Source of the DNA: Octopus sinensis
Lineage: Eukaryota
DNA: 64,000 nucleotides
Direction: 5' to 3'
Assembly (NCBI RefSeq): GCF_006345805.1
Contig: NC_042998.1
Location: 9,610,001-9,674,000, forward strand
Position numbers and translations under genes: made by a program
Notes under the pieces: generated by a model
What the model saw: only the letters and a program-made list of their open reading frames with translations
What the model was told of the DNA's origin: nothing
Databases searched by the model: none
In this document: one piece after another, positions 25,587-64,000 of the stretch
Layout: every line of letters begins with the position of its first letter
Position numbering within the stretch: position 1 is the first letter of the stretch

Positions 25587-25816
25587 TTAACCCTTTCGTT
25601 ACCATATTTCTGTTGAGATGCTCTGTGTTTCTTTCAATTAATTTTAAATATAACAAAGAATTTAGTAAAATAACTTAGTTATCATTCAGCTAGTGTTCGG
25701 AACATAAATTGTAACTAAGGTTTGGTGGAAGATTTTAATTCAGAACTTGTGAAAACAAGACATTTTTACTACGGACCTAGGGCCGGTTTCAGCCGGGTTG
25801 GTAACGAAAGGTTTAA
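25587..25816. mobile_element. piggyBac-type MITE family A
   Basis: TTAA|CCCTTTCGTTACC...GGTAACGAAAGG.|TTAA. Confidence 0.85.
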
Positions 25817-26030
25817 ATAATAAACTGCGATAGGTGAACCGTGATATGGCAAGGGATTACTGTATATAATACAAAGCCTTAATAATACTGAAAGGGTTAT
25901 GGATTAACATGACTTTGGAGGGATCTGTGATGTAAAATAATGTTATCCTTATCAGAAAATTCTGGCGGCCAGAGTACACGCGCACACACACACATACACA
26001 CACATTTTACAATCAAATGATATACTATTC

Positions 26031-26842: not shown

Positions 26843-29800
26843 TATTTCTTTACTACCCACAAGGGACTAAACACAGAGAGGACAGACAAAGGGATTAAGT
26901 CAATTATATCGACCCCAGTGCATAACTGATACTTAATTTATTGACCCAGAAAGGATGAAAGTAAAGTCGACCTCGGTGTGCTAATGTTTCTTATTTCTTT
27001 ATTGCCCACAAGGGGCTAAGCATAGAGGGGACAAACAAGGACAGACAAACGGATTAAGTCGATTACATCGACCCCCAGTATGTGACTGGTACTTAATTTA
27101 TTGATCCCGAAAGGATGAAAGGCAAAGTCGACCTCGGCAGAATTTGAACTCAGAACGTAATGGCAGACGATATACCTATTTCTTTATTACCCACAAGGGG
27201 CTAAACACGGAGGGGACAAACAAGGACAGACAAGCGGATTAAGTCGATTATATTGACCCCAGTGCGTAACTGGTACTTAATTTATTGACCCCGAAAGGAT
27301 GAAAGGCAAAATTGACCTCAGCGGAATTTGAACTCAGAACGTAGCGGCAGACGAAATACCTATTTCTTTACTACCCACAAGGGTCTAAACATAGAGGGGA
27401 CAAACAAGGACAGACGGGGCTGAAGATTGTTTTCTATCGCAACATGTTGAATATCCGACAAGGCATCGGTCTGGGCAGCAGCCATCTATGCTAGATCTGG
27501 TATTCTCCCGCTATCCAAGATCAGTGTCAGACGTATCTACGTGCGCCCCTCTTGCCAAGAGTGATCATGCGGTCCTGAAGTTCGTCATGCACACAACTTT
27601 TTCTACGCCCACGATTACTTCGCTGCCACGTAGAGTCTTCTCTGCAATTAATCTTGAAATTCTAACCGAGGCTTCCACGCTTCTGGACTGGCGATCCTTG
27701 ATGACGTTGTCCTCAGTTGACGAACTATGGTCATCCTCAAAGCATATGTAATCTGTTTGACTGACCAGGCAGTTCCCGTTGAGCTTCCCAAGGGGAAGAA
27801 ACACAAGCCCTGGGTGACGAAGAAGGTTAAACGAGAACGTCGACTCAGAGATATTGCTTGGGCTGAATTCAAAAATCTGGATTCGACTGCAGCTTTTGAG
27901 GTGTACAAAACTCAACGAGACCGAGCCGTGAAAATTGAAAAGAAAGAACGCTTCAGTTATGAATACAAAATCGCGGCAAATGCCAGTAGCAATCCAAAAA
28001 CCTTCTTTGCCAATGTCCAGCGGAATTCCCGCTTGAACAACCAGATTGCAACGTTGGTAGACTCAACAGGCGTATCGATTGAGGACCCTTATCAACAGAG
28101 TCAATTATTTGCCGAGGCTTTTTCAACTATTTTCAAACAAGATGATGGTCGTGAACCCCCTCCATTTGATAGATCGGTACTTCTAATGCTTCGATTGGTC
28201 ATCACGCGGGACGAAGTCAAACGTGTTATTCAAGGCCTCGATGTCAACAAGGGTCACGGCCCTGACGGCATACACCCACGGGTTATCAAAGCGTTGGCTC
28301 CGGTCATCTGCGAGCCCTTAACACGACTATTCAATATGTCATTGGCGACGGGTGTTATACCTGCAGACTGGAGAACAGCGATAATCTGCCCAATTTTCAA
28401 GAAAGGGAGCCACGAAGACCCGCTTAACTACCGACCGGTTTCCCTTACATCAATAATCAGCAAGATGTTCGAAACCATCCTTAAGAAAAGTATGATGCTC
28501 CACCTCCTAAACACAGCCTCTATCTCTGATTCCCAACACGGCTTCGTGCCGAAGAGATCATGCTTGACCAACCTACTAGTAATGGAAGAATTGGTGACGC
28601 GCATCCTCGATGATAGTGATGCTGTTGACATCGTTTTATTGGACTTTGCCAAAGCTTTTGACTCGGTAAACCACCGCCTACTACTTGTCAAGCTTCAAGC
28701 ATATAGTTTTCATCCGGATATTGTACGATGGGTTGGTGCCTTCCTCTCAGATCGCTCCTTCCAAGTTCAAGTTAATGGTTCGCGGTCCGACGTCTCCAGT
28801 GCGAGCAGTGGCGTGCCTCAAGGTTCAGTGCTTGGGCCCTTGTTGTTCTTAGTCTTCATAAATGACTTGCCCGACGACCTCACGCAACACACCCTTCTAT
28901 TTGCCGACGATATCAAACTGGTCGCTCCTTGCGGTAGTATAGAGGATCTTCGTCGATGCCTCCACCAAATTTGGAAGTTGTCTAACGATTGGGACCTGTG
29001 TCTGAATGTGTCAAAGTGCTGTCATCTGCCTGTCGGCTCTACTCCTGCAACTCAACTTGATTTCGAGCCGGGTCGTCTGCTGCTGGAGAGGACCGATCAG
29101 GTAAAGGACCTGGGTATCTTGGTGGATTCCTCCTTTTCGCCTTCGGCCCAGTGCGTCCATGCTGCCAACAAAGCGCGCGGAATTCTGTTTTTGATTCGAC
29201 GGTCATTCGGAATGCTCACAGCAGCCATATTCCTACCACTCTATGTCACGCTGGTGAGACCCATATTGGAGTATGGGATTCAAGCCTCTTCTCCTTATCT
29301 CCTCAAAGACATACAGCATCTCGAAAGAGTCCAGAGGCTGGCTACCCGCATGGTTCATGGTCTCAAAAATTTGTCCTACGAAGAAAGGCTGAGGACGCTC
29401 GACCTTTATTCTCTTGAAAAACGCCGCCACCGTGGTGATCTCATTCTCGCCCACAACATCATAAGCGGGAAGTGTAACCTCTCGAAAGAGCTGTTCTTCA
29501 CTCCTGCTCCGGAGCGTCGGCTGCGGGGTCATTCCGAAAAGCTCTACCTGCGACGATTTCATCTCAATCGAAGGAGAGGAGCTTTCTCTGTCCGGGTTGC
29601 GGATCCGTGGAACAAGCTGCCAGACGAGATGGTGAAGATGCCGACGACCGCTTTGTTCAAAGCCTCCCTTGACCTCAAGTGGCCTGAACTCTTTACACGA
29701 ACACCACCCTGTACTTAACTCCATGTCCCCCTACATGGCCTTGCTATTTGCTTTTGAGCCAAATTAACTAACTAACTAACTAACTAAGTCGATTACATCG

Positions 29801-35414: not shown

Positions 35415-35644
35415 TTAACCCTTTTGATACCAACCCGGCCAAAATCGCCTCTGGCTCTGTGGTACAAATGTCTTGTTTTCATAAGTTTTGAATTAAAATC
35501 TTCCACCAAACCTAAGTCACAATTTATGTTCCCAACACTAGCTTAATATTAACTAAGTTCTTTTACTAAATTCTTTGTTATATTTAAAATTAATTGAATG
35601 AAACACAGAACATCTCAAAATAAATACGGTAACGAAAGGGTTAA
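35415..35644. mobile_element. piggyBac-type MITE family A
   Basis: TTAA|CCCTTTTGATACC...GGTAACGAAAGGG|TTAA. Confidence 0.85.
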
Positions 35645-52088: not shown

Positions 52089-52240
52089 TTAACCCTTTCG
52101 TTACTGTATTTCTGTTGAGATGCTCTTTGTTTCTTTCAATTACTTTAAATATAATAAAGAATTTAGTAAAAAAATTGTGACTAAGGTTTGATGGAAGATT
52201 TTAATTCAAAACTTTATGAAAACATGATATTTGTACTCAG
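52089..52240. mobile_element. Internally deleted MITE family A
   Basis: Left end TTAA|CCCTTTCGTTAC only. Confidence 0.65.
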
Positions 52241-52806
52241 AGCCAATTTTCCTAAGCAATCCTGTAGTTGACTATGACAATAGCATAAATCTAAATTATG
52301 AAATGAAAATAAAAACCTTACAATATCTCGTGCCATGTAAAGGCACCCAGCACACTCTGTAAAGTGGTTGGCATTAGGAAGGTCATCCAGCTGTAGGAAC
52401 CATGCCAAATCAGACTGGAGCCTGGTGCAGCTTCTCCAGCTTGCCAGCTCTGGTCAAACCATCCAACCCTTGCTAGTGTGGTCAACTAGCAAGGGTTGTC
52501 CACACCAGCAATGATAATGATGATACCGATATAGTATGTGAACTTCACATATACATTAATTTTCTAAGATATTATAGGTTGATACTTTTGTAAATTTGGA
52601 TATTTAAGTGAATCTTAAGTTCAGAATTGGGTACCCTTCTTAACACAAAATACCAAACCAGTAAAGAGAAACATTATGTATTTCGTGATTTTTCTATTAA
52701 GTTTACAGGGAGATTTAAACCATTATGCCTTATATAAGATCACAATATAATGCTATCATCCAAGTTTTGTAGGTTTTTATCTTTCCTCTACTTTTAAGCC
52801 GTGATA

Positions 52807-57508: not shown

Positions 57509-58090
57509 TTAACCCTTTCGTTACCCACCTGGCTGAAACCAGCTCTGGCTCTGTAGTACAAATGTCTTGTTTTCATCAGTTTTGAATTAAAATCTTCCAC
57601 CAAACCTTAGTCACAATTTATGTTCCTAACACTAGCTGAATGATAACTAAGTTATTTTACAAAATTCTTTGTTATCATCATCATCGTTTAACGTCCGTTC
57701 TCCATGCTAGCATGAGTTGGACGGTTCGACCGGGGATCTGGGAAGCCAGAAGGCTGCACCAGGCTCCGGTCTTATCTGGCAATGTTTCTACAGTTGGATG
57801 CCCTTCCTAACGCCAACCACTCCGTGAGTGTAGTGGGTGCTTTTTACGTACCACCTGCACTGGTGCCAGGCGAGGCTGGCATTGGCCACGGTCGGATTGG
57901 TGCATTTTACGTGCCACCGGTACGGAAGCCAGTCAAGGCGGCACTGGCTTCGGCCACGATTCGGATGGTGCTTTTTACATGCCACCGACACGAAAGCCAG
58001 TCGAGGCGGCGCTGGCATTTGACACGATTCGGATAGTGCTTAAAGTAATTGAAAGAAACACAGAGCATCTCAAAATAACGAAAGGGTTAA
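57509..58090. mobile_element. MITE family A interrupted by an RTE 3'-end (-) at ~57676-58040
   Basis: TTAA|CCCTTTCGTTACC...AACGAAAGGG|TTAA with an (ATC)n-led RTE insertion inside. Confidence 0.85.
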
Positions 58091-59897: not shown

Positions 59898-60351
59898 CTG
59901 AAAAGAGAATAAAGCAGTTATTAGTTTTCATTTTATTTCATACATTGAGGACTAACGTATTTAACTATTGGCTGGTATTGAGAAGAACCCAGCGAGAGGC
60001 CCACATCATCTAGGACTACTATTAGTAGTCCTAGCTTTGACTTTCAGTTTTTGGTTCCTTCAACTGCTGATTCAGCACACATGAAATATTGATTCCATAT
60101 TAGTGAAATTCCTGTGAATTCCTTTTGCAGTGAATTAAAAAAAAAAAAGGTCAAAGCAAAGAAACAAGTGACCTACTTCTTGAATTATTGTATCGTGTAA
60201 TAAATGGTCCAGATTAAGAAAGAAAATTTTAATGATGATGATGATGATTTCAATAAATAGGTTCAAAATTAAATAAGGCAAGCACTTTGATCTTAATGCC
60301 AAGTAATTTTTTAAACTTGAAACATTCAAACATGATTTTAGAAGTACTAAG

Positions 60352-60619
60352 TGGCAAGAAAAAGAATAAACATTGACTTAAGGCTGAAGATCGACACTGG
60401 AGCCCAGAGTGATATCTTGCCTGTCAACCTCCACAAAAAGGTGTTCCCAGAACTCATGACACAAGAGTATAAAGTCAAAGAAGGAATCCTCACACCAAGT
60501 GATGTAATCCTCACTGCGTACGGAGGTACCAGGATTCCACAACTGGGCAAAACAACAATCACAGGGACACAAAGGAAAAACAATCAAGTGTTCTTTTTAT
60601 GTCACAAGAACACAAGAGA
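60352..60619 (+). mobile_element. Ty3/Gypsy pol fragment (retropepsin)
   Basis: LRLKIDTGAQSDILP aspartic protease motif, followed by LTAYGG. Confidence 0.85.
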
Positions 60620-60676
60620 CTGGTTTGAGGCACCAGTTTCTTCGGAGGTGTGGGTTCGCATCCCACGCTGCCACCA
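60620..60676 (+). pseudogene. Reverse-transcribed tRNA-Leu fragment (positions 27-76 including CCA)
   Basis: CTGGT-TTGAGGC-ACCAG anticodon arm, long variable arm, GTGGG-TTCGCAT-CCCAC T arm and GCTGCCACCA end; no D arm or 5' acceptor strand. Confidence 0.88.
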
Positions 60677-60827
60677 TGTTATGTGTAGTTTCAGTCAGGT
60701 GGGATAGACAACTCTATACGAAGCATAGTGGCAGTTCGTGTAACATGGAAAAGTAAATAACACGAAAAAGAATAACTATGCTTCGTATAGAGTTGTCTAT
60801 CCCACCAGACGGAAACTACACATAACA
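60677..60827. repeat. Foldback of an LTR 3' end: 53-bp inverted arms, 45-nt spacer
   Basis: 60677-60729 vs 60775-60827, 2 mismatches; homologous to the LTR at 63550+. Confidence 0.92.
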
Positions 60828-60898
60828 CTAAGAGTTAAAAAGACAGAAAGAGGATACATTACATTCCATTTGATATGTTATGACAGAACTTCAGATAG

Positions 60899-61129
60899 TT
60901 ATCCCTTTTGATACCAACCCGGCTGAAACCGCCTCTGGCTCTGTAGTACAAATGTCTTGTTTTCATAAATTTTGGATTAAATTTTTCCACCAAACCTTAG
61001 TCACAATTTATGTTCCTAACACTAGCTTAATGATAAACTAAACTATTTTACTAAATTCTTTGTTATATTTAAAATTAACTGAAGGAATCACAGAGCATCT
61101 CAAAATAAATACAGTAATGAAAGGGTTAA
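60899..61129. mobile_element. MITE family A
   Basis: TTAT|CCCTTTTGATACC...TAATGAAAGGG|TTAA. Confidence 0.8.
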
Positions 61130-61187
61130 ATTTGTCCTGGAGCCCTTTCTTTTTAAATTCTTCACCCTTCCATTTTATACTTTAGAT

Positions 61188-62945: not shown

Positions 62946-63536
62946 ATATCTGTAAATGGGTGGATGCAGCCAAAGGCCTCCCAATCGCTAGGTGACAGCA
63001 TTAAACCAAGCAAGGGGTCAAGTGGGTATGAAATATTTTGGCACAGTTGTTTTGGCGCCACCTCTTTAGCATCGCTGACTTGATGGAGACTTGACATCAG
63101 ACATTTCATTGTTCTCTCGTTTTCACCATTACCACACTCTCTCCTTTATGAATATGAGCATATTTCTCTTATTGTTGTGTATGAGGAGAGGGAAGGTGTT
63201 TATACCAATTGCATTCAATTAAATAAATTGCTCTCTCTATCCTTCCCTCTCTGATTTACTCTTATCTTTTCATTTTTTTTCATTTTTTTTTTGAAAAAAC
63301 TTTATCATGAATAAAAAGAGAAAATATTTACATTTTTTTTATCAAAATATACCATTAGTTTCAATTGCCTAAAAAAAATTTAATAAGAAAGTGAAAACCA
63401 AATTGAGTAAAATTAAATTAATCATAGCAGTTTTTTGAAAGTTCATGTATATTTTTTTTTTCTTTAACGGTATCAAACCGGCGGCAGGATGTTCTTTCTG
63501 TTTTGTTGTAAAGGCACAGTTTCCGATTAATTATTT

Positions 63537-63777
63537 ACCGCTGCCACCATGTTATGTGTTATTTCATTCTAATGGGATAGACAACCAATATGAAAGCCAC
63601 TGTTATTGTTTTACGTGTTTATTTACTTTTCATGTCACACAAACTGGCCACATTCAGCACAGCGACACCTATATAACTTTAGACACAGCGGAGTAATACT
63701 TATAAAATAGTGCCAAAAGCGGGGACGCATTCCACACACGCACGCCCACGCACACGCATATATATGAATGTGTAACA
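63537..63777 (-). mobile_element. Gypsy-type LTR (~63550-63777) with tRNA-Leu primer-binding site (63537-63549)
   Basis: Minus strand reads TGTTA...AATAAA...CATAACA followed by PBS TGGTGGCAGCGGT. The distal LTR boundary is tentative. Confidence 0.65.
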
Positions 63778-64000
63778 CTCATTGTATGTGCATATTTCAG
63801 CACACACATGCATGTGTGTGTATGTGTGCTTGCCTGATGTGCCAAAACAGGTTGACTGTCCAGCCAGCCATGCCAAACCATTGGCAGCCAAACAGCTGCA
63901 CCTAATTGTCTCATCCTGTGACTAAGCCTAACACTGAAGAACAAATACAGTCCACCTAACAAAACTTCTGTAGTTATTCTTTACTTGATTTCATCCGTGT

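What the first reader, a model, noticed from the sequence alone, without database searches (positions are those of the whole stretch)
60347..60832. Integrated snap-back LTR-retrotransposon cDNA that copied its own modified tRNA-Leu primer
Seen: CTAAG|TG...CA|CTAAG, a 5-bp TSD around 476 bp. The order is pol protease (60352-60619), tRNA-Leu nt 27-76 with CCA (60620-60676), inverted 53 nt of the LTR end, then ~98 nt of the LTR end in sense. Against the invertebrate tRNA-Leu(AAG) as I recall it (CTGGTTTAAGGCACCAG...TTCGAAT), the anticodon reads GAG, the T-loop reads TTCGCAT and homology starts exactly at position 27. Established: A34 is edited to inosine (read as G), m1A58 normally stops plus-strand synthesis and causes misincorporation on read-through, and m2,2G26 is a strong RT block. 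Inference: minus-strand strong-stop DNA folded back, copied itself through the attached tRNA primer, stalled at G26, jumped to pol RNA and was integrated using a non-LTR TG end. That would be a germline fossil of three tRNA modifications. Caveat: three other differences (two C->T, one C deletion) show some later decay.
Basis: partly seen in the sequence, partly recalled or inferred. Interest (0 to 1): 0.85.

Follow-up and report, generated by a model that had tools for sequence, protein, structure and literature searches.

The report
Snap-back retrotransposon cDNA carrying tRNA copy
A 476-bp insert in an octopus genome is a misfired copy of a Gypsy-type retrotransposon that folded back on itself and copied two-thirds of the tRNA-Leu that primed it, so it preserves in DNA how the enzyme read that chemically modified tRNA.

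Summary
CTAAG|TG…CA|CTAAG brackets 476 bp made of a sense protease fragment, tRNA-Leu nt 27-76 with CCA, 53 nt of inverted LTR end, and 98 nt of LTR end in sense.

I found the parent Ty3/Gypsy family in Octopus vulgaris and O. sinensis. The same elements carry this protease (92-95% nt identity), this LTR (80-90%), a tRNA-Leu PBS of 13-18 nt, and 5-bp target duplications.

The 98-nt arm starts 3-5 nt upstream of the initiator-like CAGTT, 27-29 nt after the LTR's TATATAG. That is the length expected of full-length minus-strand strong-stop DNA.

Among 49 eukaryote-type tRNA-Leu genes with this anticodon stem, none has GAG and all have A58. An unrelated Gypsy element in a marine metagenome contig (L036) carries an independent copy of the same tRNA. 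It also starts exactly at nt 27 and reads G34, its only difference from the gene.

The snap-back and read-through reading is therefore supported. I34 and a stop at position 26 are well supported. The m1A58 "fossil" is not: two other read-through copies keep A58. The empty site, the host's full tRNA gene and the copy number could not be tested.

It is a new variant of known aberrant reverse-transcription products.

The parts
60347..60351 (.). Left copy of the 5-bp target-site duplication CTAAG
   Evidence: The family makes 5-bp duplications (CTGAC in L125, GGATG in L123).
60352..60616 (+). Sense fragment of Ty3/Gypsy pol (aspartic protease, DTGA motif). It begins with TG at an internal pol site. 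A 2-nt deletion near 60567-60571 shifts the frame.
   Evidence: 92-95% nt identity to pol of Octopus family copies L001, L002, L123-L125, L128 and L129. Protein relatives are gag-PR-RT-RH-INT. The parents continue on both sides.
60617..60619 (+). Junction AGA of uncertain origin. It is either untemplated or miscopied bases at the template switch, or pol ...GAC with a 1-nt insertion overlapping C27.
   Evidence: alignment: parents read AAG|GACCAGC, the insert reads AAG|AGA|CTGG.
60620..60676 (+). cDNA copy of the primer tRNA-Leu(IAG), nt 27-73 plus the post-transcriptional CCA (60674-60676). G34 at 60627, C58 at 60659.
   Evidence: Alignment to tRNA-Leu(AAG) genes. CCA abuts the U5 terminal base exactly as in tRNA-primed minus-strand DNA. 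Normal family PBS is only 13-18 nt.
60677..60729 (+). Last 53 nt of the LTR (U5) in minus-strand polarity. This is the inverted arm.
   Evidence: 51/53 complementary to 60775-60827. Homologous to family LTR ends.
60730..60827 (+). R-U5 in sense, 98 nt: 45-nt loop (60730-60774) plus the 53-nt arm (60775-60827). On the minus strand this is the full-length minus-strand strong-stop DNA.
   Evidence: 80-90% identical to family LTRs. It starts GGCAGTT, 3 nt (5 with the GT overlap) upstream of the A of the Inr-like CAGTT and 27-29 nt after TATATAG. It ends at the LTR terminus ...ACATAACA.
60828..60832 (.). Right copy of the target-site duplication CTAAG
63289..63778 (-). Context, not part of the insert: a related, heavily deleted family copy. 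It has a 5' LTR (63550-63778), PBS TGGTGGCAGCGGT (63537-63549), a short leader, then the last ~210 nt of the internal region.

Best explanation
The insert is a dead-end product of reverse transcription of an Octopus Ty3/Gypsy element that its integrase nevertheless inserted into the germline.

Shown by sequence: the order, orientation and borders of the pieces; their homology to one family; the CCA/U5 abutment; the TSD.

Inferred order of events, reading the window's minus strand 5'>3':

(1) tRNA-Leu(IAG) bound to the PBS primed minus-strand strong-stop DNA through U5 and R to the 5' end of the RNA (98-100 nt).

(2) First-strand transfer failed. The free 3' end turned back on the strong-stop DNA, leaving a 45-nt loop with at most a 2-nt AC/GT match, and RT copied its first 53 nt.

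(3) RT ran on into the covalently attached primer tRNA. It copied CCA, the acceptor, the T arm (past A58), the variable arm and the anticodon arm, reading inosine-34 as G.

(4) RT stopped before G26, which is m2,2G in eukaryotic tRNA-Leu. After 0-3 odd bases it switched to genomic RNA in the protease region, about 1.3 kb from the PBS, and made 265-268 nt of antisense pol.

(5) A second strand was made, perhaps from a purine-rich RNase-H-resistant oligo just upstream of TGGCAAG.

(6) Integrase joined the natural U5 ...CA end and a fortuitous internal ...CA end to the target with a 5-bp stagger.

(7) Later decay added a few substitutions and two small deletions.
For: - Anatomy and TSD.
- Protease fragment, R-U5 and a Leu PBS belong to one family. 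L123 and L125 carry both LTRs, the PBS and the protease homologue about 1.07-1.32 kb downstream of the PBS. L124 and L128 are the closest in both pol (94.4-94.8%) and R-U5 (89-90%).
- The family's TSDs are 5 bp.
- The family PBS is 18 nt in two L128 copies (TGGTGGCAGCGGTGGGAT, ending just before A58) and 13 nt in four others. None extends further into the tRNA.
- CCA abuts the U5 end base, which is the covalent junction of primer and minus-strand DNA.
- The sense arm begins at the predicted RNA 5' end: TATATAG, 27-29 nt, then GGCAGTT with an Inr-like CAGTT conserved in all LTR copies.
- Antisense pol after the tRNA copy fits an RNA acceptor at a stage when no minus-strand pol DNA exists.
- Independent case L036: LTR-CA|TGG...CCAG|pol, with the tRNA copy ending at C27. 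A34>G is its single difference from the gene in 57 nt; the chance of exactly that change is about 0.006. There pol follows in sense, as expected for ordinary plus-strand strong-stop read-through onto minus-strand DNA.
- 0 of 49 genes have GAG; 49 of 49 have A58.
- Literature:
  - I34 is read as G at about 100% and m2,2G26 is nearly stoichiometric and a major RT barrier (PMC8062790).
  - Without the m1A58 stop, plus-strand DNA runs on into the tRNA and transfer fails (PMC11251516; PMC13191261).
  - Self-priming of minus strong-stop DNA and RT 'clamping' on 2-nt matches are documented (PMC4668388).
Against: - No base-pairing beyond 2 nt explains where the fold-back primed.
- The arms differ at 2 of 53 positions, which needs later mutation or two different templates.
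- m1G37, expected in tRNA-Leu, left no trace. This is compatible with its 14-80% stoichiometry.
- A58 is unchanged in L036 and L126, so C58 here may be ordinary decay.
- The transcription start is predicted from TATA/Inr only.
- No family copy is more than 95% identical, so the true parent was not found.
- How the left end was cut at TGGCAAG is conjecture.
- The host's own complete tRNA-Leu gene, the empty site and the genome-wide copy number were out of reach.
Confidence: 0.75

Rival explanations
1. Same product, but the priming was intermolecular. The 3' end of one strong-stop DNA primed on the second strong-stop DNA (with its tRNA) made from the co-packaged second RNA. It was not an intramolecular snap-back.
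For: The two arms differ at 2 of 53 positions, which two non-identical co-packaged RNAs would give at once. There is no stable intramolecular pairing at the priming point.
Against: The sequence outcome is identical, so it cannot be told apart here. The pol part and the tRNA part also carry later changes, so 2 mismatches are within expected decay.
Confidence: 0.2
2. The border at nt 27 is not an arrest at m2,2G26. It is run-off at the 5' end of a tRNA-Leu 3' fragment (nt 27-76) that served as primer, followed by end-to-end template jumping.
For: RTs switch templates readily at template ends. Two independent copies end at exactly the same base, which a specific cleavage site would also give.
Against: - Known tRNA halves and fragments are cut in the anticodon or T loops, not between 26 and 27 (my own knowledge).
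- m2,2G26 is a documented, nearly stoichiometric RT barrier at exactly this position.
- A third copy (L126) ends elsewhere, at about nt 45, so the end is not fixed by one fragment species.
Confidence: 0.12
3. The cDNA fragment was captured at a chromosomal break by end-joining and was not inserted by the element's integrase.
For: The left end is not an LTR end. Capture of retroelement cDNA at breaks is known in yeast (my own knowledge).
Against: The exact 5-bp duplication equals the family's TSD length. Both 3' ends are CA. The right end is the exact LTR terminus with no loss or filler. End-joining does not make a 5-bp duplication.
Confidence: 0.06
4. The structure is a composite of separate events (nested insertions, inversion or deletion by host recombination) or an assembly artefact. 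It would then not be one cDNA molecule.
For: A related deleted copy lies 2.7 kb away. Foldback chimeras occur in long-read data.
Against: - All four internal junctions fall at points with meaning in reverse transcription: the CCA/U5 end, tRNA nt 27, the RNA 5' end and the LTR terminus.
- One TSD brackets the whole.
- The arms differ at 2 positions, so they are not a duplicated read.
- L036 repeats the tRNA features independently.
Confidence: 0.04
5. The tRNA-like stretch comes from a tRNA gene, pseudogene or tRNA-derived SINE that happened to lie next to LTR fragments.
For: Octopus genomes are rich in tRNA-derived SINEs (reference list seen).
Against: - There is no 5' half or A box, and ARAGORN finds nothing.
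- CCA is present and abuts the LTR terminus in the orientation of a primer.
- There is no other copy of the stretch in about 330 kb of Octopus DNA examined.
- No gene with GAG was found.
Confidence: 0.02

Closest known systems
Self-priming (snap-back) of retroviral minus-strand strong-stop DNA, e.g. TAR-dependent self-priming in HIV-1 that nucleocapsid suppresses (Guo et al. 1997, as cited in PMC4668388)
   Same: The 3' end of strong-stop DNA turns back and is extended on itself when strand transfer fails. RT tolerates 2-nt matches.
   Different: The known case is an in-vitro or abortive product. Here the product went on through the primer tRNA, switched to pol RNA, became double-stranded and was integrated in a germline. 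Priming was not from the local 7-bp hairpin.
Read-through of the primer tRNA beyond m1A58 during plus-strand strong-stop synthesis (HIV-1 tRNA-Lys3; PMC13191261, PMC11251516)
   Same: DNA synthesis templated by the primer tRNA past the 18-nt PBS copy, halted at a later modified base, giving a 3' end that cannot transfer.
   Different: - Different tRNA (Leu) and different halt (nt 26, against 54, 55 or 37 in tRNA-Lys3).
- The copying strand in the window was primed by strong-stop DNA itself, not by the PPT.
- It is preserved as chromosomal DNA.
- L036 and L126 look like the classical PPT-primed version.
Strong-stop-DNA model for the origin of tRNA-derived SINEs (Ohshima, Koishi, Matsuo & Okada 1993, PNAS 90:6260). 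I saw only the title; the model's content is from my own memory.
   Same: tRNA part, then CCA, then the minus-strand copy of U5/R in one DNA molecule that reaches the genome; and it is in a cephalopod.
   Different: This copy lacks the tRNA 5' half with the A box, so it cannot be a pol III-driven SINE. It is apparently single-copy and carries a pol fragment and a second, inverted R-U5.
Modification-induced misincorporation and stop signatures used in tRNA sequencing (mim-tRNAseq, PMC8062790; m1A signature, PMC4787781)
   Same: I34 is read as G, there is a barrier at m2,2G26, and m1A58 and m1G37 are variable.
   Different: The 'sequencing' was done by a retrotransposon RT in vivo and archived in a germline.
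Helenus TRIMs (LTR elements with tRNA-like sequence inside the LTR; PMC10886601)
   Same: tRNA-derived sequence inside an LTR-type element.
   Different: In Helenus a whole tRNA-like pol III promoter unit lies within the LTRs and the family is mobile. Here a 3' two-thirds copy with CCA sits at the PBS position in primer orientation.

Membership tests
Ty3/Gypsy (Metaviridae-type) LTR retrotransposon, as source of the insert | Pol order PR-RT-RNaseH-INT with a D-T/S-G-A protease | tested here: met
   The insert has KIDTGAQ. Relatives P0005 and P0006 show RVT_1, RT_RNaseH, Integrase_H2C2 and rve in that order. L002, L123, L125 and L129 have the same layout.
Ty3/Gypsy (Metaviridae-type) LTR retrotransposon, as source of the insert | LTRs TG...CA, PBS complementary to a tRNA 3' end next to the 5' LTR, PPT before the 3' LTR | tested here: met
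   Family LTR TGTTACAC...ACACATAACA (about 230 bp), PBS TGGTGGCAGCGGT(GGGAT), PPT AAGAAGAAGGGA.
Ty3/Gypsy (Metaviridae-type) LTR retrotransposon, as source of the insert | Short target-site duplication of fixed length made by integrase | tested here: met
   5 bp in L125 (CTGAC), in L123 (GGATG) and at the insert (CTAAG).
Complete or solo-LTR copy of that family | Two full LTRs, or one full LTR, bracketed by the TSD | tested here: not met
   Only R-U5 (98 nt) and an inverted 53 nt are present. There is no U3, and the left end is internal pol.
Functional tRNA-Leu gene | Complete cloverleaf with 5' half; no encoded CCA in eukaryotes; A58 | tested here: not met
   ARAGORN finds none. Homology starts at nt 27, CCA is present, and position 58 is C.
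tRNA-derived SINE | Internal pol III A and B boxes | tested here: not met
   There is no A box, because nt 1-26 are absent.
tRNA-derived SINE | LINE-type or A-rich tail | tested here: not met
   The insert has no A-rich or LINE tail.
tRNA-derived SINE | Many dispersed copies | tested here: inconclusive
   No second copy was found in the roughly 330 kb of Octopus DNA available. This sample is too small to settle copy number.
Minus-strand strong-stop DNA (as the 98-nt arm) | Starts at the base next to the PBS/primer CCA and ends at the RNA 5' end (start of R) | tested here: inconclusive
   The 5' end criterion is met exactly (CCA|TGTT). The 3' end lies 3-5 nt upstream of the Inr-like CAGTT, 27-29 nt after TATATAG. 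However, the start site is only predicted, not measured.
microRNA precursor (Rfam MIR841 / MIR2646 hits) | Score at or above the family's gathering threshold | tested here: not met
   56 and 52 bits against thresholds of 200 and 245. These are generic long-hairpin matches.

The most novel reading that the evidence does not exclude
Read-through copies of primer tRNAs next to LTR ends may be a widespread, minable 'fossil record' of tRNA modification. I34, the m2,2G26 block and perhaps m1A58 could be read in extinct or unsampled lineages. This octopus insert may also be the missing physical example that strong-stop DNA with its tRNA can be completed and integrated by integrase, which is the step postulated in 1993 for the birth of tRNA-derived SINEs.
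Probability: 0.3. Interest if true: 0.8.

Novelty: new variant of a known kind. Interest (0 to 1): 0.65.

Why it matters
Each step (self-priming of strong-stop DNA, read-through of the primer tRNA, non-homologous template switching, use of a non-LTR CA end by integrase) is known from test-tube or cell-culture work on retroviruses. In that work the products are treated as dead ends.

This locus shows that all of these steps can occur in one molecule in vivo, in a mollusc, and still reach the germline.

The locus also shows, together with two further copies found here, that retrotransposon RTs leave the same marks on tRNA-Leu that modern tRNA sequencing uses: G at inosine-34 and a stop at position 26. 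Genomes may therefore record past tRNA modification states.

It gives a concrete search pattern for finding more: more than 18 nt of tRNA plus CCA abutting an LTR terminus. It also gives indirect support for the strong-stop-DNA route to tRNA-derived retroposons.

Tried and rejected
- Rfam on 60500-60900 gave no tRNA hit for the truncated copy. It returned only sub-threshold miRNA-hairpin matches caused by the 53-bp stem. Rejected as generic.
- Pfam on the 88-aa protease piece and on the L036 pieces gave nothing. The family assignment therefore rests on HMMER and BLAST relatives.
- ARAGORN on the window and on seven Octopus loci found no tRNA gene. The host's own tRNA-Leu gene was therefore not obtained. 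Only its last 18 nt could be inferred, from the 18-nt PBS in L128.
- I looked for an empty site. The joined flanks have no paralogue in the window or the loci; only a ~230-bp interspersed repeat starting 67 bp to the right matches. Window ORFs are not in the protein collections, so no orthologous contig could be fetched.
- I looked for more read-through copies:
  - Viral contigs gave none.
  - Genome contigs gave one bacterial tRNA and one eukaryotic contig inside a MAG.
  - A protein-word search with the translated L036 junction gave nothing.
- P0135, a Logan ORF with partial coverage, was checked as a possible second junction. It is ordinary protease.
- I considered that the 53/45-nt split marks the R/U5 border (AATAAA lies in the loop). 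I could find no mechanism linking it to the fold-back point and left it as coincidence.
Only unmodified slices of public loci were compared, and the temporary query files were deleted.

Full report
**1. The observation**

The sequence is exactly as described. CTAAG (60347-60351) and CTAAG (60828-60832) bracket 476 bp that begin with TG and end with CA. The insert consists of four parts, left to right:

- 60352-60616: a retroelement protease in sense.
- 60620-60676: a tRNA-like stretch ending in CCA.
- 60677-60729: 53 nt that are the reverse complement (51/53) of 60775-60827.
- 60730-60827: 98 nt of LTR end in sense.

The minus strand of 60620-60827 folds into a 53-bp hairpin at -67 kcal/mol, z = -14.5. 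ARAGORN sees no tRNA gene. Rfam sees only sub-threshold generic hairpin matches.

**2. Host and parent family**

The 88-codon open piece (KIDTGAQSDILP…LTAYGG) finds gag-PR-RT-RNaseH-INT polyproteins of the Ty3/Gypsy type. Its closest relatives, at 87-88% aa identity, are named Octopus vulgaris; further relatives are from O. sinensis and O. bimaculoides.

I fetched seven Octopus loci.

- Their pol is 92-95% identical in DNA to 60352-60616 and continues on both sides of it. The insert's left end is therefore an internal pol site that happens to read TG. The pol homology ends at AAG (60616), followed by AGA and then C27 of the tRNA.
- The same elements carry LTRs of about 230 bp (TGTTACAC…ACACATAACA) that are 80-90% identical to the 98-nt arm, and a PPT AAGAAGAAGGGA.
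- Next to the 5' LTR they carry a PBS for tRNA-Leu. It is 18 nt (TGGTGGCAGCGGTGGGAT) in two copies in L128 and 13 nt in four others.
- L124 and L128 are the closest copies in both pol and R-U5, so the two parts of the insert come from one subfamily.
- L125 and L123 are flanked by 5-bp duplications (CTGAC, GGATG), the same length as CTAAG.
- A related, heavily deleted copy lies in the window itself at 63289-63778 on the minus strand.

**3. The tRNA part**

A scan of metagenome contigs for the anticodon stem-loop with any base at position 34 returned 50 eukaryote-type tRNA-Leu sequences.

- Of these, 28 read AAG, 20 TAG and 1 CAG, all as complete genes. One reads GAG.
- All 49 genes have A at position 58, and apart from one isodecoder seen in two contigs (L071, L114) they are not followed by CCA.
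- The modal AAG gene reads …GGCG|CTGGTTTAAGGCACCAGTCTCTTCGGAGGCGTGGGTTCGAATCCCACCGCTGCCA.
- The insert matches this gene from C27 to A73 and then has CCA, with no similarity upstream of C27.
- It differs at five positions: A34>G, A58>C, two C>T (one at a CpG), and one C lost from CCCACC.
- The 18-nt PBS of L128 confirms the host tRNA's last 18 nt as ATCCCACCGCTGCCACCA, so the missing C is derived.
- Normal family members carry no tRNA sequence beyond the PBS. The 57 nt were therefore copied from a tRNA molecule and not inherited.
- CCA abuts the terminal base of U5 in inverted orientation. This is the covalent junction of primer and minus-strand DNA.

**4. An independent second case, and a third**

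The single GAG sequence is not a gene. In contig L036 (marine metagenome) an unrelated Gypsy element, about 37% aa identity to the relatives of the Octopus family, reads LTR…ATCAACA|TGGTGGCAGCGG…CTCAAACCAG|GTTCAAATGGCT…. That is the LTR, a copy of tRNA-Leu from CCA down to exactly C27, and then pol in sense.

Over 57 nt its only difference from the gene is A34>G. The chance of exactly that single change is about 0.006.

A third copy is L126, a eukaryotic contig binned into a bacterial MAG. It reads …CA-TT-TGGTGGCAGCGG… down to about nt 45 of an isodecoder with the arm CATTTCGATGG. It is then joined to the element's own 3' minisatellite.

Both of these copies keep A58.

**5. The 98-nt arm is as long as full-length strong-stop DNA**

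In all LTR copies a TATATAG box is followed, 27-31 nt later, by an initiator-like CAGTT, and further on by AATAAA. The insert's sense arm starts GGCAGTT. That is 3 nt upstream of the A of CAGTT, or 5 nt if the GT shared with the inverted arm is counted. It runs to the LTR terminus.

A random breakpoint would fall this close to the predicted start in roughly 3% of a 230-bp LTR (my arithmetic). It fits minus-strand DNA that reached the 5' end of the RNA.

**6. Mechanism**

The sequence facts above are shown. The order of events is inferred. Reading the minus strand 5'>3':

- Strong-stop DNA of 98-100 nt was made.
- Its 3' end was then extended on its own first 53 nt, with a 45-nt loop containing a local 7-bp hairpin and at most a 2-nt AC/GT match.
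- Synthesis continued into the attached tRNA down to C27, reading I34 as G.
- After 0-3 odd bases there are 265-268 nt of antisense pol. That requires an RNA (sense) acceptor, and this fits an early stage at which no minus-strand pol DNA exists.
- In L036 the tRNA copy is followed by sense pol. That is expected for classical PPT-primed plus-strand strong-stop DNA that read through and landed on minus-strand DNA. The two cases are thus each consistent with the templates available at their stage.
- The left end may have been set by plus-strand priming, since the parents read ACAAAAGAAGTC just upstream of TGGCAAG. This is conjecture.
- Both 3' ends are CA, the right one is the exact LTR terminus, and the duplication has the family's length. 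These point to integrase and not to end-joining.

**7. What the literature says**

- I34 gives G in cDNA at about 100%. m2,2G26 is nearly stoichiometric and a major RT barrier. m1G37 is 14-80% occupied and m1A58 is variable (PMC8062790).
- The m1A signature depends on context (PMC4787781).
[quoted passage not shown] Without it, synthesis runs on to later modified bases or to the tRNA 5' end, and transfer fails (PMC13191261; PMC11251516).
- Self-priming of minus strong-stop DNA and template switches on 2-nt matches are documented for HIV-1 (PMC4668388).
- The 1993 squid-SINE paper of Ohshima et al. could be seen only as a reference (it is not held). That it proposes strong-stop DNA with its primer tRNA as the source of tRNA-derived SINEs is from my memory.
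- Helenus TRIMs carry tRNA-like units inside LTRs and are a different thing.
- I found no report of an integrated germline product combining these steps. The library does not cover most subscription journals, so absence there is weak evidence.

**8. Which 'fossils' hold**

- I34: strong. Two of two independent copies that reach the anticodon read G, and none of 49 genes does.
- Arrest at position 26: good. Two of two copies end at C27. A tRNA fragment as primer is a weaker alternative.
- m1A58: open. C58 is one of five differences here, and the other two read-through copies show A58. This fits read-through being easiest on primers that lacked the methyl group. That both 34 and 58 are hit among five random differences has a chance of about 0.006, but most of that weight is carried by position 34.
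- m1G37 left no mark.

**9. Limits**

- No empty site could be obtained.
- The host's complete tRNA gene was not found.
- Copy number in the genome could not be measured. About 330 kb of Octopus DNA held no second copy of the junctions.
- The nearest family copies are only 90-95% identical.
- The transcription start is predicted, not measured.

**10. Verdict**

It is a new variant of known aberrant reverse-transcription products. It is of moderate to high interest to retroelement and tRNA-modification specialists, mainly because it is an in-vivo, germline-archived example and because it suggests a general way to mine genomes for past tRNA modification states.

Noticed in passing
window 63289-63778 (minus strand): A related family copy 2.7 kb from the insert. 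It has a complete 5' LTR, a 13-nt Leu PBS and about 55 nt of leader joined directly (about 5-nt overlap at 63495-63499) to the last ~210 nt of the internal region, with no 3' LTR. It is another template-switch-type deletion derivative.
   Followed up: partly
L036 1-3145 (OFEP01008567.1): A 139-bp LTR, a 57-nt tRNA-Leu copy ending at nt 27 with G34, then 5'-truncated pol. The contig repeats itself with a 2,660-bp period at 92-93% identity. The read-through product is therefore either a multi-copy or tandem deleted family there, or the assembly wrapped around LTR copies.
   Followed up: partly
L126 3492-4916 (CBDHDV010000357.1, labelled MAG: Rubritalea sp.): A eukaryotic Gypsy element with a 24-bp minisatellite and a 39-nt tRNA-Leu read-through copy sits in a contig binned as a bacterial genome. 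This is probably host or eukaryote contamination of the MAG.
   Followed up: partly
L128 9088 and 24049; compare window 63549, L001 8939, L123 9881, L125 9877: The family PBS exists in two states: the full 18 nt TGGTGGCAGCGGTGGGAT, and a 13-nt form in which GGG is replaced by AAA (…GGTAAAT…).
   Followed up: partly
window 27727-29718 (+): An intact 663-aa ORF with a reverse-transcriptase domain (RVT_1, E = 7e-31) unrelated to the Gypsy family. The exact protein is not in the public collection.
   Followed up: no
window 60900-61130, 35415-35644, 25587-25819, 57509-57675, 52089-52245: A ~230-bp interspersed repeat (72-90% identity between copies), SINE-like in size, begins 67 bp to the right of the insert. 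A copy also occurs in L002 and L123.
   Followed up: no
L071 805 and L114 2222 (minus strands): A complete tRNA-Leu(AAG)-like sequence with a different acceptor stem is followed directly by CCA (…CTTCGAACACCATTTT). This is unusual for a eukaryotic tRNA gene and could be a retro-copy of a mature tRNA.
   Followed up: no
protein P0006 (1928 aa): One gene model joins a DM DNA-binding domain (residues 6-43) to a full Gypsy gag-pol. It is probably a chimeric annotation.
   Followed up: no
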